Shown: positions 32,426 to 55,098 of the stretch, piece by piece
Layout of the letters: each line of letters begins with the position of its first letter
How positions within the stretch are numbered: position 1 is the first letter of the stretch
NCBI RefSeq assembly: GCF_001194135.2
Contig: NC_068982.1
Span: 92,189,302-92,253,301 of the forward strand
Direction: 5' to 3'
DNA length: 64,000 nucleotides
Origin: Octopus bimaculoides
Lineage: Eukaryota
Made by a program: the position numbers and the translations under genes
The notes under the pieces: model-generated
Databases searched by the model: none
Told to the model about the DNA's origin: nothing
Seen by the model: the letters and a program-made list of their open reading frames with translations, nothing else

Positions 32426-33434
32426 ATGACCACAATTACTGAAAGAAAATTTTTAAAAAATCTTAGTACACCTCCAGGGGACTTACGCTATGAAATTGAA
32501 AGATTATTGACGTTTTTTGAAAATATTCATCCAAAGCTAACATCTGTACAACTCTCTGGAAATGGTTATTATTATGATACTACAGCAGAAAAAATTATGT
32601 GCTATTTCTGTAAAACTGTAGTTAAATTTTCAGATTCCAGTTTCAAACATGACCATTCATGTAGATACAAAGTTGACAGTTTTCCAGTCTATTTATATGA
32701 TGAAACAGATGGTGAAAATGCTGCAGCTTTTAATGTTCAAAACACTGAACGAGAAACTGAGACTGTAGTAACAACTAGTACTGAAAAAGTTATTAATTCA
32801 AATAAAAATGAAATGCTTGATATGCAAAAAAGACTGGATACCTTTAAAAATTGGAACAAAAGCGTGCCAGTAACACCCACAGATCTTGCCAAGAATGGAT
32901 TTTATTACCTAGGTTATGGAGATGCTGTTAAATGTGCATACTGCTCTGTCCAACTGCGCAACTGGAAAGAAAATGATGATGTCCATAAAGAACATACACG
33001 TTTTAGTCCGAAATGTCCAAATTTAGAATCTTTTATGAAAATGGATTTGAAATACGAACTGAATCGGATAAAAAGTTTTGTCAAGTGGACGACATCTTAC
33101 CCATTAAAAGCTAAAGATTTGGCAGCTAATGGTTTCTACCACAAGGGGCCTGCAGATAATGTCTGTTGTATATTTTGCAAATGTGAAATCAATAATTGGA
33201 AAGCCAATGATAATATTAAAGAAAAACACAGGTCAGTTTCACCGAACTGTCCTTTCTTGTGTGAGAAATTGGTAGGTAATGTACCTATACAAGCTCGGAG
33301 TAACATTCTATTTGACCGCCCGATACATCCGAATCTTGCTTTGTTAAGTGAACGCCTTAAAACATTTTCTTCGTGGCCAAAGGATAAAAAACAAAAACCA
33401 GAAGTTTTAGCAGAAGCTGGTTTTTTTCATAATG
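32426..33434 (+). CDS. IAP coding exon 1: degenerate BIR, BIR-B, BIR-C and first half of BIR-D
   Basis: ORF 32426..33448 contains RLDTFKNW...GFYY...CAYC-x16-H-x6-C and RIKSFVKW...GFYH...CIFC-x16-H-x6-C, then RLKTFSSWP...AGFFHNG. Donor AATG|GTAAGT at 33434/33435. A polypyrimidine tract with AG acceptors lies at 32403 and 32409, just upstream of the ATG. Confidence 0.95.
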
Positions 33435-53206: not shown

Positions 53207-55098
53207 CACGCACACAAACACATCATAATGGGTGTTATGTCCATCTGTCTGTCTGTCCGTCTGTTCCCTCTTCATGGTCAAACGGCTGGACCAATGGTCA
53301 TGATGTCTTTTGGGGATTATGAAGGAGGTAATCAGGAAGGTTTTTAGCGAAAAAATGTTAAAAAAGTATGATTATTTAGTGGATATTAGTTTTGCATTAA
53401 TAAATCACCTTTGTCTTTTTGGTTTTTTTTTGGTTTTTTTATGTTAAAATTCCGGTGACGAGGATTAACTCTGGATTTCCCCCGTATAGTTCGTGAATTT
53501 AGAGGATTTAGATTTGCGATACTATCCCTTTATTGCCCATCGTAGATGGGCAGATTTGCTATCTTACTATAATGGACATAATGTCTGTTCCCTTTTCACA
53601 GCCAGACGTTTAGATCAACGGTTACGATATTTTGGGGGATTACAAAGACAGTCACCAGGAAGGTTTTTAGCACTAAAGAATCAGAAAATATGATTATTTC
53701 GTGGATATCTATTTTTGAATTGATAAACAACCTTTGCATTTTTATTAAAAATTCACTGACCATGAGTAAGTCTGGATTTTCATCATATAGTCCATGGCCC
53801 CATCGTAGATATGAAGGGGATCATGAGGACGGTTAATAGCAAAAATAAAATGAAAAAAAGTGTGTGTGATTATTTAGTGGATTCGAAATGGCTAATCGAA
53901 GCCACTGTTGTTTATGTCTCAGTTTTGTCAATCAAAATAACCCATGATACCAGAACATCCTGACATTATTTGCATAGAACAGTGAGAGGTAAGTCTTAGT
54001 TTGATTTTTTGCAACTCCAAAGATTCCGCTCATGCATTCGCAGCAAACAAGACACAGGGCCAGACTTTAGATCATGTAGCTGTACTTTTACCCACTCCAA
54101 TGTTTACACATGGACAGTTATATGTCACTATGAGTAGAGCAACGGACTCCAGTTATTTGAAAATTAGTGTCGATCAAACGGAAAATATCATCTACAAAGA
54201 AGTTTTGTAATCATATTGGTATTATCGAACGGAATACAATTCATAATTTAAATAAGGAAATTTGTGAACTTTAAATGTATAAGAGTATAAATAAGCTTAA
54301 AATAGTGTAAACAACTAAAATAAAAGTATATCTATCAAGTCCATTTACACATTTCTCAATACATACTGCTGTTATGACTTCCCTCCCTCATTTTATGCCT
54401 CCATTTTATTGTAGATGGGTAGATTTGCTAGTATATATAATAATGATGATGGTATATTGTTTATTAGAATAACAATCTGTTTAGAACACAAGAATAAGTT
54501 TGTATACACAGCTGTAATATTTAGAGGTTGATAGGTAACATGTCTACATACAGTTTTGAGTGAATTAAGTAGACAGAAACTGTGAAGAAGCTCATTATGT
54601 GCATGTGTTGTTTGTCCCGCCACCACCACCACTTGACTTGTTTGTGTCCCCCATAACCTAGCACTTCAGCAAAGAGACCAATAGAATAAGTACCAGGTTT
54701 GAAAAGAAGTACTGGGGTTCATTTGTGTGACTAAAACCCCTTCAGCATGGCCACAGTTCAATGACTGAAGCAATAAAAGATAAAAGATGAACTGTTGATA
54801 TTGTTTTTAATATTCAAAATGTATGACTATTTGTTGCATTTTTTTATATTTCAACAATGTATATTCATTCTTCCATGTATTCATTTTTTTTCTTTTTCCT
54901 TCATCAGACGCTGATCTAGTTAAAGAGAATAATATGCTGAAAGAACTGAAGCTTTGTAAAATCTGTTTAGATGAAGAATTGAGTGTGGTATTTTTACCAT
55001 GTGGCCATTTGGTCAGTTGTGCATCATGTGCACCTGCTCTCAGTAACTGTCCTGTGTGTCGACAAAAGGTTCATGGAATGGTTAAGACATTTTTCTGA
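32426..55098 (+). CDS. Baculoviral IAP repeat-containing E3 ubiquitin ligase (XIAP/cIAP-like IAP), 6 coding exons, 585 aa: degenerate BIR + 3 BIR + UBA + RING
   Basis: Manual splice join 32426-33434, 36780-36961, 40762-40864, 45120-45254, 46296-46433, 54908-55098 = 1758 nt. The frame is open throughout, all introns are GT-AG, and phases are 1,0,1,1,1. Three C-x2-C-x16-H-x6-C BIR motifs, an MGY-containing UBA and a C3HC4 RING are present. Orthology to a specific vertebrate BIRC cannot be resolved by eye, so no symbol is given. Confidence 0.9.
35213..35687. mobile_element. piggyBac-type MITE (TTAACCC...GGGTTAA) carrying a hairpin insertion
   Basis: Starts TTAACCCTTTG and ends ...AATGCTAAAGGGTTAA. 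Interior interrupted at 35280-35524. Confidence 0.65.
35882..36110. mobile_element. piggyBac-type MITE, same family as 3021-3247 in the opposite orientation
   Basis: Starts TTAACCCTTTTGTTATC. Body is the reverse complement of 3070-3247. Right end decayed (ATAGTTAA). Confidence 0.75.
36396..36610 (+). mobile_element. tRNA-derived SINE
   Basis: ...TTCTGAGTTCAAATCCTGCTGAGGTCAACCTTACCTTTC...AAGTACTGGGGTTGAT, family shared with 55906 and 56185. Confidence 0.65.
36780..36961 (+). CDS. IAP coding exon 2: second half of BIR-D
   Basis: Acceptor CTACAG|G and donor CAG|GTAAAA. Translates (G)[60 protein letters not shown], completing the BIR in phase. Not in the supplied ORF track. Confidence 0.95.
37013..37391 (+). 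mobile_element. Young full-length tRNA-derived SINE with TSD
   Basis: Head GGAGGCGCAATGGCCCAGTGGTTAGG (A box) ... GGTTTCGATTCCC (B box) and an A-rich tail. 12-bp TSD AACTTTTATTGA at 37001-37012 and 37392-37403. Confidence 0.9.
38017..38458 (+). mobile_element. RTE 3' UTR repeat ending in (GAT)n
   Basis: CpG-rich, little-decayed copy of 11945-12479. Confidence 0.85.
38795..39130 (-). mobile_element. RTE 3' UTR-derived repeat, inverted relative to 38017-38458
   Basis: CATCATCATACATCC...CATGGGTTGGACAGTTTGAC...CTCCAGTCTGATTTAGC. Confidence 0.7.
39450..40330 (-). mobile_element. Probable Penelope-like retroelement RT remnant
   Basis: Minus strand has GSLTS... and NDRKLPF motifs resembling PLE RT (GSPLSP, KLPFLD). 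Very decayed. Confidence 0.35.
40762..40864 (+). CDS. IAP coding exon 3: S/T-rich linker
   Basis: T-rich tract with AAAG|GTG acceptor and TCAG|GTAAGA donor. Reads VLDNASSVLDGSAEPTEGSSTIEDVTTFPNTPTS. Phase 0 in and phase 1 out fit both neighbouring exons. Confidence 0.75.
41559..44417 (-). mobile_element. Decayed full-length hAT Buster/Charlie (ZBED5/8-like) transposon
   Basis: TIRs CAGTGTTTCCCAAA / TTTGGGAAGCTATG and 7/8 TSD ATGTAGAC / GTGTAGAC with central TA. Broken ORFs: CFLCHQTLTNEAMKPSHLKYH, IPFSNNTISRHI...STQVDEST...HCLAQQHHL and LAFPTSYLVESG...QTHGSH. Subterminal ATCGCCCACC repeats. Confidence 0.92.
45120..45254 (+). CDS. IAP coding exon 4: N-terminal part of UBA domain
   Basis: TTGTAG|G acceptor and ACAG|GTAAGC donor. 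Reads (G)ILPKSRNLKYKYSCLDTPPVLAVLSMGYKRNVVKRVVKNKIKET, with the IAP-type UBA MG[FY] motif. Confidence 0.85.
46296..46433 (+). CDS. IAP coding exon 5: end of UBA and acidic linker
   Basis: TTTAAG|G acceptor and GCTA|GTAAGT donor. Reads (G)SSFSKASQLLEAIHKCPDFDDDIEDVSDEEEPVQTTIKNDTEMSA, completing the TG..F....LLEAI UBA helix. Confidence 0.85.
47253..50513. repeat. Long inverted duplication (arms about 47253-48404 and 49740-50513)
   Basis: 47262-48001 is the reverse complement of 49767-50495. After a ~375-bp left-arm-only segment, 48377-48404 pairs with 49740-49766. Confidence 0.95.
48430..49218 (-). mobile_element. Internally deleted Chapaev3 (CMC) transposon
   Basis: From ATG 48843 the minus strand gives MPRNCVN / DFCYICGNLTFKSLR*RFMLLIKKCYVHYFDCKMGDQDKSWA, the FCYICG...GDQDKxWA N-terminus of Chapaev3 transposases. 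Terminus ...GTTGACCAGTG|TTA at 49218. Confidence 0.75.
50790..51631 (+). mobile_element. RTE LINE 3' part running into a gap
   Basis: WKQVLESKGLRVNLAKTK...VDSFCYLGDQV...LRWYGHLARMDEDSCVKKC...GRGRPRKTWDEVVKHDL. Confidence 0.9.
52755..52975 (-). mobile_element. SINE copy
   Basis: TTTTACTTGTTTCAGTCATTTGACTGTGGCCATGCTGGAGCACC...; related pieces at 16755 and 54625. Confidence 0.65.
53223..54431 (+). mobile_element. Non-autonomous Helitron with Pif1 helicase C-terminal remnant
   Basis: Starts A|TC with a (TGTC)n subterminal microsatellite and ends CTAG|T. ORF 54001..54210 has AFAANKTQGQTLDHV...PMFTHGQLYVTMSR...TENIIYKEVL. Hairpin GCCCATC-GTA-GATGGGC at 53536-53552. Confidence 0.85.
54908..55098 (+). 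CDS. IAP terminal coding exon: C3HC4 RING domain
   Basis: CATCAG|AC acceptor. Reads ADLVKENNMLKELKLCKICLDEELSVVFLPCGHLVSCASCAPALSNCPVCRQKVHGMVKTFF*, a typical IAP RING. Confidence 0.95.

What the first reader, a model, noticed from the sequence alone, without database searches (positions are those of the whole stretch)
32426..55098. Four-BIR + UBA + RING IAP architecture
Seen: BIR-like aa 19-80, BIRs at about 131-200, 207-278 and 303-371, UBA at about 447-490, RING at 539-585, and no CARD. Established: XIAP, cIAP1/2 and DIAP2 have three BIRs plus UBA and RING, DIAP1 has two BIRs, and molluscs are known for IAP expansions with varied domain content. Inference: a lineage-specific four-BIR E3 in a tandem cluster. 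Automated annotation may miss the first BIR or split the gene, because four exons are absent from or poorly captured by ORF scans.
Basis: partly seen in the sequence, partly recalled or inferred. Interest (0 to 1): 0.7.

Follow-up and report, generated by a model that had tools for sequence, protein, structure and literature searches.

The report
Octopus IAP with extra shortened BIR
This is a real, already annotated octopus inhibitor-of-apoptosis ubiquitin-ligase gene (three normal BIR domains, UBA, RING); its only unusual feature is a conserved, shortened fourth BIR-like zinc module at the N-terminus that standard domain scans just miss.

Summary
Six GT-AG exons on the + strand (32426-55098) splice into a 585-aa protein. 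It has an N-terminal BIR-like unit, three canonical BIRs, a UBA and a C-terminal RING, and no CARD. Both assembly gaps lie in introns and break no exon.

The gene is not new. The 585-aa protein is identical to Octopus bimaculoides RefSeq XP_014774548.1 ("putative inhibitor of apoptosis isoform X2"). The O. vulgaris ortholog differs at one residue. The annotation therefore neither split the gene nor missed its 5' end.

What domain scans do miss is the first unit. It scores 22.0 bits against the Pfam BIR cut-off of 22.9. It is a true BIR homolog (hhalign 98.2%, E 5.6e-14) with a 7-residue deletion, giving CxxC-x12-H-x3-C instead of CxxC-x16-H-x6-C. All four zinc ligands are invariant from octopods to the cuttlefish Sepia esculenta, where the whole architecture is read from single RNA-seq contigs.

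The gene sits in a tandem paralog cluster spanning about 255 kb. Four-BIR IAPs are already published as a molluscan type, and IAPs with 1-6 BIRs are catalogued across animals.

Verdict: an ordinary XIAP/DIAP2-like E3 ligase with a modestly interesting, coleoid-wide degenerate BIR. Low interest.

The parts
17422..17438 (+). Alternative 5' coding exon of RefSeq isoform X1 (MGISSR), spliced to 32404
   Evidence: ATGGGCATATCGTCACG followed by GTGAGT. Joined to 32404 it reproduces the first 13 residues of XP_014774540.1 / P0001.
32404..33434 (+). Large coding exon (ATG of the 585-aa isoform at 32426). Encodes the N-terminal BIR-like unit, BIR-a, BIR-b and the first half of BIR-c. Donor G|GTAAG, phase 1.
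   Evidence: Single ORF. Splice sites read. Spliced translation equals P0001 residues 7-598.
32480..32680 (+). N-terminal shortened BIR-like unit, aa 19-85. Zinc-ligand motif CxxC-x12-H-x3-C at aa 59-79 (window 32600-32662).
   Evidence: Pfam BIR 22.0 bits against a 22.9 cut-off, profile positions 1-47 only. hhalign against canonical BIRs 98.2%, E 5.6e-14, with one 7-residue deletion. PDB hits are BIR domains only. C59, C62, H75 and C79 are invariant in 13 sequences.
32831..33025 (+). BIR-a, aa 136-200, canonical CxxC-x16-H-x6-C, signature EHTRFSPKC. Resembles the middle BIR (BIR2) of three-BIR IAPs.
   Evidence: Pfam 83.6 bits. Best PDB matches cIAP1 BIR3/BIR2 and XIAP BIR2. Position-specific HMM for BIR2 scores slightly best.
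33065..33259 (+). BIR-b, aa 214-278, canonical spacing, signature KHRSVSPNC. Type I, XIAP-BIR1-like.
   Evidence: Pfam 71.7 bits. Best single-domain PDB match is XIAP BIR1, 2pop/2poi. The top four BLAST hits are first BIRs of three-BIR+RING proteins.
33353..33434 (+). BIR-c, first half (aa 310-336); continues in the next exon
36780..36961 (+). Exon 2: second half of BIR-c (to window 36895; aa 337-375; CFSC...EHARWFPRC, type II) plus linker
   Evidence: BIR core found by motif scan. Pfam 87.3 bits for the joined domain. Best PDB match DIAP1 BIR2 at 103.9 bits, then cIAP1 BIR3. BIR3 HMM is best by 10-18 bits.
40762..40864 (+). Exon 3: Ser/Thr/Glu-rich linker (aa 398-431)
   Evidence: tblastn of P0001 and exact spliced match.
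41696..41727 (.). Assembly gap (32 N) inside intron 3; no exon affected
45120..45254 (+). Exon 4: first half of the UBA domain (UBA = aa 447-487)
46296..46433 (+). Exon 5: second half of the UBA plus acidic linker
51632..52289 (.). Assembly gap (658 N) inside intron 5. A reverse-transcriptase-like ORF fragment runs into its left edge and a (TA)n-type repeat lies on its right.
52775..52782 (+). Coding part (..II stop) of the alternative last exon that would give the RING-less RefSeq isoform X3 (537 aa)
   Evidence: P0176 ends ...TEMSAII. The only good acceptor (polypyrimidine tract + CAG) followed by TCATTTGA is at 52773-52782. Inferred; no transcript was seen here.
54908..55098 (+). Last exon: RING (zf-C3HC4_3, aa 537-579), C-terminal tail ...VKTFF and stop codon
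   Evidence: Pfam 58.6 bits. Acceptor TTCATCAG|.
5587..5778 (+). RING exon of the upstream tandem paralog (not part of this gene)
   Evidence: tblastn: 94% identical to O. vulgaris P0008 and 63% to this gene's RING. RING motif found.

Best explanation
The locus is the Octopus bimaculoides gene already annotated as 'putative inhibitor of apoptosis' (XP_014774540.1, XP_014774548.1, XP_052834407.1). It is an XIAP/DIAP2-like RING E3 ubiquitin ligase.

Shown here:
- One long exon encodes a shortened BIR-like module (N), a BIR2-like BIR (a), a type I XIAP-BIR1-like BIR (b) and half of a type II BIR3-like BIR (c).
- Five further exons add the rest of BIR-c, a UBA and a C-terminal RING.

Inferred from established IAP biology:
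- BIR-c keeps the DGGL.NW....PW.EHA.WFP.C signature of IBM-binding BIRs. It probably captures IBM-bearing caspases or Smac/Reaper-type antagonists.
- BIR-b probably serves as an adaptor-binding type I BIR.
- The UBA probably binds ubiquitin chains.
- The RING, with its aromatic C-terminal tail, probably dimerises and transfers ubiquitin.

The N unit:
- It is a diverged copy of a BIR1-type domain that lost 7 residues of the segment between the CxxC knuckle and the final cysteine. That segment forms the alpha3 helix and peptide groove in canonical BIRs. It also lost both conserved tryptophans, but kept all four zinc ligands.
- It most likely still folds as a small zinc-stabilised BIR-like module. 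It probably cannot bind IBM peptides and probably acts as a protein-interaction or regulatory module.

The unit order reads B1*-B2-B1'-B3. This suggests an internal duplication of a BIR1-type unit in an ancestral three-BIR gene before octopods and decapodiforms split.
For: Gene model and identity:
- The exact spliced match to P0001.
- Cluster members and their RefSeq names.
- The 585-aa identity of P0175.

Domains:
- Pfam scores.
- PDB sequence matches: BIR-b to XIAP BIR1, BIR-c to DIAP1 BIR2 and cIAP1 BIR3.

The N unit is a BIR homolog:
- hhalign 98.2%, E 5.6e-14 over 64 columns.
- The N-unit profile hits only IAP BIR domains in the PDB: NAIP BIR1 4e-9, DIAP1 BIR1 7e-6.
- An AF2 model built on a mixed alignment reaches pLDDT 85.5. 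All top-50 Foldseek hits are BIR domains, the best being DIAP1 BIR1 (E 4.5e-4, TM 0.61).

Constraint on the N unit:
- C59, C62, H75 and C79 are invariant in 13 sequences.
- The N unit is 100% identical in O. vulgaris and 94% in the Argonauta ortholog. It is 34-36% identical in decapodiforms, where the flanking linkers drop to 4-9%.

Single-transcript evidence in a relative:
- The 576-aa Sepia esculenta homolog, with the same four units plus RING, is one ORF on six RNA-seq contigs shown, each from a different run, of seven contigs on record. Two of the run accessions are tied to S. esculenta larval transcriptomes.

Unit order:
- Position-specific HMMs from 51 non-cephalopod three-BIR+RING proteins were scored on seven cephalopod proteins.
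- N scores best with BIR1 in 7/7.
- Unit a scores best with BIR2 in 6/7, by 1-6 bits.
- Unit b scores best with BIR1 in 5/7.
- Unit c scores best with BIR3 in 7/7, by 10-18 bits.
Against: - No functional data of any kind. E3 activity, caspase or IBM binding and zinc binding are all inferred.
- The N unit fails Pfam's curated threshold (22.0 against 22.9 bits) and matches only profile positions 1-47.
- AF2 with N-unit sequences alone gave a poor model (pLDDT 54.5), with only weak Foldseek matches (E >= 0.16).
- The confident model was built from an alignment that also contained canonical BIRs, so it leans towards their fold.
- The BIR1/BIR2 assignments of units a and b rest on differences of a few bits plus signature residues, not on a phylogeny.
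- No O. bimaculoides transcript was examined here. No Logan RNA-seq ORF fell in this protein's 90% cluster.
Confidence: 0.85

Rival explanations
1. The N-terminal unit is a decaying relic: an unfolded, non-functional remnant of a BIR that merely sits at the N-terminus of an ordinary three-BIR IAP.
For: - It scores below Pfam's gathering threshold and matches only the first two thirds of the profile.
- It has lost 7 residues, including the region around the canonical His, and both conserved Trp.
- AF2 on N-unit sequences alone gives pLDDT 54.5.
Against: - The four zinc ligands, plus R26, F30, L43 and G47, are conserved from Octopus to Sepia.
- It is 94-100% identical among octopod orthologs. 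Across the octopod-decapodiform split it is 34-36% identical, against 4-9% for the adjacent linkers. A relic would have decayed like the linkers.
- The deletion length and the x12/x3 spacing are fixed in all 14 cephalopod sequences (P0001-P0011, P0017, P0021 and the window's own unit).
Confidence: 0.1
2. The four-unit protein is an annotation or assembly artefact: two neighbouring tandem IAP genes, or sequence on either side of an assembly gap, wrongly joined.
For: - The locus lies in a tandem paralog cluster and contains two N gaps.
- Fused BIR-RING-BIR-RING models are a known artefact class (PMC13159474).
Against: - The N unit, BIR-a, BIR-b and the first half of BIR-c lie in one uninterrupted 1009-nt ORF stretch. 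No join is needed for the four-unit part.
- Both gaps are deep in introns.
- The O. vulgaris, O. sinensis and Argonauta assemblies give the same protein.
- Sepia esculenta RNA-seq contigs carry the whole ORF contiguously.
Confidence: 0.02
3. The N-terminal unit is not BIR-derived. It is another small zinc finger (for example RING-like or zf-C3HC/NuBaID-like) that resembles a BIR by chance. Its CxxC-x12-H-x3-C spacing is close to the RING's CxxC-x13-H-x3-C.
For: - The spacing coincides with the first half of the protein's own RING.
- PF07967 (zf-C3HC) hits occur in this family.
Against: - The PF07967 hits fall on the canonical BIR-a and BIR-c, not on the N unit.
- The N-unit profile hits only BIR domains in the PDB (63 of 63 distinct sequences).
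- It aligns to the BIR profile from the RLxTF helix through the final Cys.
- The similarity lies mainly upstream of the CxxC, where RINGs have nothing comparable.
Confidence: 0.03

Closest known systems
XIAP (BIRC4) / Drosophila DIAP2: three-BIR + UBA + RING IAPs
   Same: - Three canonical BIRs, including one type I (KHRSVSPNC, as in XIAP BIR1) and one C-terminal type II (EHARWFPRC).
- A BIRC2/3-type UBA, a C-terminal zf-C3HC4_3 RING with a short aromatic tail, and no CARD.
- The first BIRs share one large exon.
   Different: - An extra shortened BIR-like unit in front.
- The BIR2-like unit precedes the BIR1-like unit.
- No functional data.
cIAP1/cIAP2 (BIRC2/3)
   Same: - The UBA matches the BIRC2/3 UBA family.
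- BIR-c is about 91 bits to cIAP1 BIR3.
- The RING is of the same type.
   Different: No CARD between UBA and RING, and an extra N-terminal unit.
Molluscan 'type D' IAPs with four BIRs (Song et al. 2021, PMC7831173)
   Same: - A four-BIR architecture, described as a molluscan novelty kept at low copy number.
- Many database proteins with 4-6 canonical BIRs plus a RING exist.
   Different: - In the cephalopod protein the first unit is not a canonical BIR. It has a 7-residue deletion and scores below the Pfam threshold.
- Orthology to bivalve type D was not tested.
Oyster 'Type Y' BIR (Witkop et al. 2022, PMC8917759)
   Same: A zinc-ligand-retaining BIR that has lost three residues between the His and the last Cys, including position 80. 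This gives H-x3-C and a predicted shortened helix.
   Different: - The cephalopod unit has a further 4-residue deletion between CxxC and His (x12 instead of x16) and lacks both conserved Trp.
- It is fixed across coleoids rather than scattered among recent paralogs.
DIAP1 BIR1 (PDB 1sdz, 3siq)
   Same: - Best structural match of the N-unit model (E 4.5e-4, TM 0.61, 83 columns).
- The best single-domain chain hit of the N-unit profile in the PDB (E 6.7e-6); the multi-BIR NAIP chains rank higher overall.
   Different: Only 22% identity. DIAP1 BIR1 has the full-length alpha3/alpha4 region and an IBM groove.

Membership tests
IAP family (BIR-containing proteins) | At least one BIR domain above the curated Pfam PF00653 threshold, with CxxC-x16-H-x6-C zinc ligands | tested here: met
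   Three domains at 83.6, 71.7 and 87.3 bits against a 22.9 cut-off. The canonical motif occurs at aa 170-197, 248-275 and 344-371.
XIAP/DIAP2-like RING IAP | C-terminal RING of the zf-C3HC4_3 type | tested here: met
   58.6 bits against a cut-off of 27, aa 537-579.
XIAP/DIAP2-like RING IAP | UBA domain between the BIRs and the RING, and no CARD | tested here: met
   PF21290 UBA_BIRC2-3 at 28.1 bits against a 27.2 cut-off (marginal pass). It is 100% conserved in Argonauta and 60% in Sepia. There is no CARD hit in aa 398-522.
XIAP/DIAP2-like RING IAP | BIR order type I (BIR1) - BIR2 - BIR3 | tested here: not met
   The canonical units read BIR2-like, BIR1-like, BIR3-like, by top BLAST hits, position-specific HMMs and signature residues, in both Octopus and Sepia. 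The margins for units a and b are only a few bits, so this rests on weak discrimination.
XIAP/DIAP2-like RING IAP | E3 ubiquitin-ligase activity and binding of caspases or IBM peptides | not testable with these tools
   Only the sequence signature is seen: [24 protein letters not shown] in BIR-c and a C-terminal ...VKTFF tail.
BIR domain (applied to the N-terminal unit) | Score above Pfam PF00653's gathering threshold over the whole profile | tested here: not met
   22.0 bits against 22.9. Only profile positions 1-47 of 70 are matched.
BIR domain (applied to the N-terminal unit) | Canonical zinc-ligand spacing CxxC-x16-H-x6-C | tested here: not met
   The spacing is CxxC-x12-H-x3-C in all 14 cephalopod sequences, the window's own unit included. 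Four candidate ligands are nevertheless invariant.
BIR domain (applied to the N-terminal unit) | Homology to BIR domains | tested here: met
   hhalign 98.2%, E 5.6e-14. The PDB profile search returns only BIR domains, down to E 4e-9.
BIR domain (applied to the N-terminal unit) | BIR fold (three-stranded sheet, flanking helices, one zinc) | tested here: inconclusive
   The model from N-unit sequences alone has pLDDT 54.5 and weak BIR matches. The model from an alignment that also holds canonical BIRs has pLDDT 85.5. Its best match is DIAP1 BIR1 at TM 0.61, and all top-50 hits are BIRs. That alignment biases the model. Zinc is not modelled.
Molluscan type D (four-BIR) IAP | Four BIR domains in one IAP, plus orthology with bivalve type D genes | not tested
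   The architecture matches only if the N unit is counted as a BIR. No bivalve type D sequence was identified for comparison.

The most novel reading that the evidence does not exclude
The N-terminal unit is a distinct, functional 'mini-BIR' subtype (CxxC-x12-H-x3-C, no peptide groove) that arose once before the octopod-decapodiform split. It arose by internal duplication of a BIR1-type domain (order B1*-B2-B1'-B3). It has been kept for a new partner-binding or autoregulatory role in the main coleoid XIAP-like ligase. Related shortened BIRs (oyster Type Y; P0126 from an unidentified taxon) may form an overlooked class that standard domain models do not detect.
Probability: 0.3. Interest if true: 0.4.

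Novelty: new member of a known kind. Interest (0 to 1): 0.22.

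Why it matters
It matters little beyond cephalopod cell-death biology. It shows that threshold-based domain counts under-report BIR number in cephalopod IAPs: surveys would score this family as three-BIR. The best-conserved coleoid XIAP-like ligase carries a compact zinc module whose partner is unknown. The near-identity of the protein between O. bimaculoides and O. vulgaris (584/585) marks it as the strongly constrained, probably housekeeping member of a cluster whose other members are only 66-72% identical to it over their full length. 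For the genome scan, the main value is negative. The gene is correctly annotated, the gaps are harmless, and four-BIR IAPs are already in the literature.

Tried and rejected
- The search for homologous proteins with the N-unit alignment A3 returned nothing at E <= 1e-8. The word index seems unsuited to a short profile. That search was wasted, and the exhaustive HMMER search served instead.
- AF2 on N-unit sequences alone gave a low-confidence model, and its Foldseek matches were not significant.
P0007 is not on record. So the upstream paralog's gene could not be placed directly, and no O. bimaculoides transcript contig was obtained.
- Supplements of PMC13159474 are not held. Those of PMC8917759 and PMC7831173 do not list this protein's accession. 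So I could not see how published surveys scored its architecture.
- Pfam scans of intronic ORFs gave nothing for the minus-strand ORFs at 41997-43559 and only weak helicase and PHD hits elsewhere.
- I considered and rejected a hidden exon in either gap, a gene fusion artefact and a non-BIR zinc finger (see rival explanations).

Full report
**What is in the sequence**

The window is AT-rich (34.5% GC) and has six runs of N. One 1,023-nt ORF at 32426-33448 contains two complete canonical BIR zinc motifs and the start of a third. The rest of the third lies at 36800-36883, and a RING lies at 54955-55059.

A protein search with the first two exons returned a 100% identical, 598-aa Octopus bimaculoides protein, "putative inhibitor of apoptosis isoform X1" (P0001). 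Mapping it back with tblastn and reading the junctions gave these exons: 32404-33434, 36780-36961, 40762-40864, 45120-45254, 46296-46433 and 54908-55098. All are flanked by AG/GT. Their spliced translation equals residues 7-598 of P0001 exactly. The first six and a third codons come from a small 5' exon at 17422-17438.

Starting at the ATG at 32426 gives 585 aa.

**The gaps**

Gap 41696-41727 lies in intron 3 and gap 51632-52289 lies in intron 5. Each is hundreds to thousands of bases from the nearest exon. No reading frame crosses them.

The independently assembled O. vulgaris ortholog (CAI9717313.1) is also 585 aa and differs at one residue. The Argonauta hians ortholog is 93% identical, with no extra segment at the exon 3/4 or 5/6 junctions. 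No coding exon is therefore hidden in a gap.

**Domains**

| Unit | Residues (585-aa model) | Pfam family | Bits |
|---|---|---|---|
| BIR-a | 136-200 | BIR | 83.6 |
| BIR-b | 214-278 | BIR | 71.7 |
| BIR-c | 310-375 | BIR | 87.3 |
| UBA | 447-487 | UBA_BIRC2-3 | 28.1 (cut-off 27.2) |
| RING | 537-579 | zf-C3HC4_3 | 58.6 |

There is no CARD. The N-terminal piece alone gives a BIR hit of 22.0 bits (E 2.4e-4). This is 0.9 bit below the curated cut-off and covers profile positions 1-47 of 70 only.

**What the N-terminal unit is**

Its cysteine/histidine pattern is CxxC-x12-H-x3-C, instead of the canonical CxxC-x16-H-x6-C. This exact spacing is present in every octopod paralog and ortholog recovered and in three more distant cephalopod sequences.

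The evidence that it is BIR-derived:
- A profile of eleven N units aligns to a profile of 22 canonical BIRs with 98.2% probability (E 5.6e-14). The alignment runs from the RLxTF helix to the last cysteine, with a single 7-residue deletion.
- Against all PDB sequences, the N-unit profile hits nothing but IAP BIR domains. The best hits are first-position BIRs: NAIP BIR1 4e-9, DIAP1 BIR1 7e-6, cIAP1/2 BIR1 about 2e-4.
- An exhaustive HMMER scan of 1.84 billion representative proteins found full-length matches only in four cephalopod-type clusters: P0009, P0010, P0017 and P0021. Nearly all other listed hits aligned mainly up to about profile position 65, which is generic BIR similarity.

Structure prediction gave two results:
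- With N-unit sequences only, the model was poor (pLDDT 54.5) and its Foldseek matches were not significant.
- With an alignment that also contains canonical BIRs, the model was confident (pLDDT 85.5, pTM 0.76). All of its top 50 PDB matches are BIR domains, the best being DIAP1 BIR1 (E 4.5e-4, TM 0.61). That alignment biases the result, so I treat the fold as probable, not shown.

Both conserved tryptophans are missing, as is the segment between the CxxC knuckle and the last cysteine, which carries the helix and peptide groove in canonical BIRs. By inference, the unit cannot bind IBM peptides in the usual way.

**Is the unit constrained?**

Yes.
- C59, C62, H75 and C79 are invariant in 13 sequences. 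R26, F30, L43 and G47 are nearly invariant.
- The unit is 100% identical in O. vulgaris and 94% in the Argonauta ortholog. It is 52-78% identical in paralogs and 34-36% in decapodiform sequences.
- In the decapodiform sequences the neighbouring linkers have fallen to 4-9%, while the canonical BIRs are 44-68% identical.

This is the pattern of a folded domain that evolves somewhat faster than its canonical neighbours. It is not the pattern of a relic.

**Distribution and transcript evidence**

P0011 (576 aa, 43% identical) has the same four units plus a RING. It is encoded as one uninterrupted ORF on contigs of 2.3-6.4 kb. Six contigs, each from a different sequencing run, were shown, of seven on record. 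Two of those runs, SRR20545811 and SRR23936171, are Sepia esculenta larval RNA-seq.

The architecture is therefore transcribed as a single mRNA in a cuttlefish, and it predates the octopod-decapodiform split.

I could not obtain O. bimaculoides transcripts. The 90% cluster of this protein contains only NCBI gene models.

RefSeq predicts three isoforms, and all contain the N unit. X3 (537 aa) lacks the RING. Its last two codons fit an alternative exon starting at 52775.

**Cluster**

- The window holds the RING exon of an upstream same-strand paralog at 5587-5778. It is 94% identical to O. vulgaris P0008.
- On chromosome CM046602.1, paralog P0002 lies at 91.989-92.013 Mb, P0004 at 92.0855-92.0876 Mb and this gene at 92.2067-92.2444 Mb.

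**Order of the units**

| Unit | Best matches |
|---|---|
| BIR-c | Third BIRs of three-BIR+RING proteins; DIAP1 BIR2 104 bits; BIR3 HMM ahead by 10-18 bits |
| BIR-b | Signature KHRSVSPNC; best matches are first BIRs (XIAP BIR1) |
| BIR-a | Signature EHTRFSPKC; slight preference for the middle-BIR model |
| N unit | BIR1 model scores best in all seven cephalopod proteins tested |

The order thus reads B1*-B2-B1'-B3. This suggests an internal duplication of a BIR1-type unit in a three-BIR ancestor, followed by degeneration of the N-terminal copy. It is an inference from small score differences and needs a proper per-domain phylogeny.

**Comparison with what is known**

- The gene has been in RefSeq since the first O. 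bimaculoides annotation. Its family was included in a published molluscan IAP survey; paralog XP_014776964.1 appears in a supplementary alignment of PMC8917759.
- Octopus species have 10-11 IAP genes. Cephalopods have 8-11.
- Four-BIR IAPs are described as a molluscan "type D" (PMC7831173).
- A 2026 survey catalogues 121 IAP architectures with one to six BIRs (PMC13159474).
- Among the 150 best representative hits here, dozens have four to six canonical BIRs plus a RING.
- A shortened, zinc-retaining BIR with H-x3-C ("Type Y") is described in oysters (PMC8917759).

I did not find three things described: the cephalopod unit's further 4-residue deletion, its fixation across coleoids, and the permuted unit order.

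**Verdict**

The clade is coleoids rather than octopus, and four-BIR IAPs are already known. The locus is a correctly annotated XIAP/DIAP2-like E3 ligase gene with a modestly interesting degenerate BIR. Interest is low (about 0.2). The most novel surviving reading is a functional "mini-BIR" class.

Noticed in passing
window 5587-5778 (+): Last (RING) exon of an upstream tandem paralog. It is 94% identical to O. vulgaris P0008 and 63% to this gene's RING. The rest of that gene lies outside the window.
   Followed up: partly
whole protein (P0175 vs P0172, P0173): Unusually strong conservation. The O. vulgaris ortholog is 584/585 identical and the Argonauta hians ortholog 93%. The neighbouring O. 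bimaculoides full-length paralog P0002 is only 72% identical, and its O. vulgaris counterparts 66-68%. This copy is the constrained member of the cluster.
   Followed up: partly
P0126 (236 aa, Logan contig, taxon unknown): A two-BIR + RING protein whose first BIR has the same CxxC-x12-H-x3-C spacing (CFSCGIKVNIFQAVDQHNPDC). It is only about 27% identical to the octopus N unit. This is either convergent shortening or a wider overlooked BIR subtype.
   Followed up: no
window 52773-52782 (+): A strong acceptor (polypyrimidine tract + CAG) followed by TCATTTGA. It fits the alternative last exon of the RING-less RefSeq isoform X3, which ends ...SAII. It lies 486 nt after the 658-N gap.
   Followed up: partly
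window 41997-43559 (-): A chain of ORFs (74, 115, 172 and 99 aa) in intron 3, next to the 32-N gap. By eye they look like a decayed DNA-transposon (hAT-like) transposase. Pfam found no family.
   Followed up: partly
window 50721-51631 (+): ORF fragments resembling the C-terminal part of a retrotransposon polyprotein, with a weak PHD hit of 19.2 bits. They run directly into the 658-N gap, so the gap probably sits in a repeat.
   Followed up: partly
window 53986-54207 (+): A 74-aa ORF in intron 5 with weak helicase C-terminal hits (Herpes_Helicase 23.2 bits, UvrD_C_2 17.6 bits). It is probably a Pif1/Helitron-type fragment.
   Followed up: partly
window 2604-3035 (-) and 27875-28303 (-): By eye, a mariner/Tc1-like transposase C-terminal fragment and a reverse-transcriptase fragment. 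The first lies just upstream of the upstream paralog's RING exon. The second lies in the long intron between this gene's alternative 5' exon (17422) and 32404. Neither was scanned.
   Followed up: no
window 11694-11703, 20346-20355, 23188-23653, 30556-31056: Four further assembly gaps outside the finding's coordinates. Three of them lie inside the 15-kb first intron of isoform X1. Where the flanks were read (the 11694, 20346 and 51632 gaps) they are dinucleotide microsatellites that read as YIYIYI or RERERE in translation.
   Followed up: no
P0018 (605 aa, Logan): A protein made of five near-identical tandem canonical BIRs without a RING ranked high against the N-unit profile. It is an example of extreme BIR repetition from an unidentified organism.
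   Followed up: no
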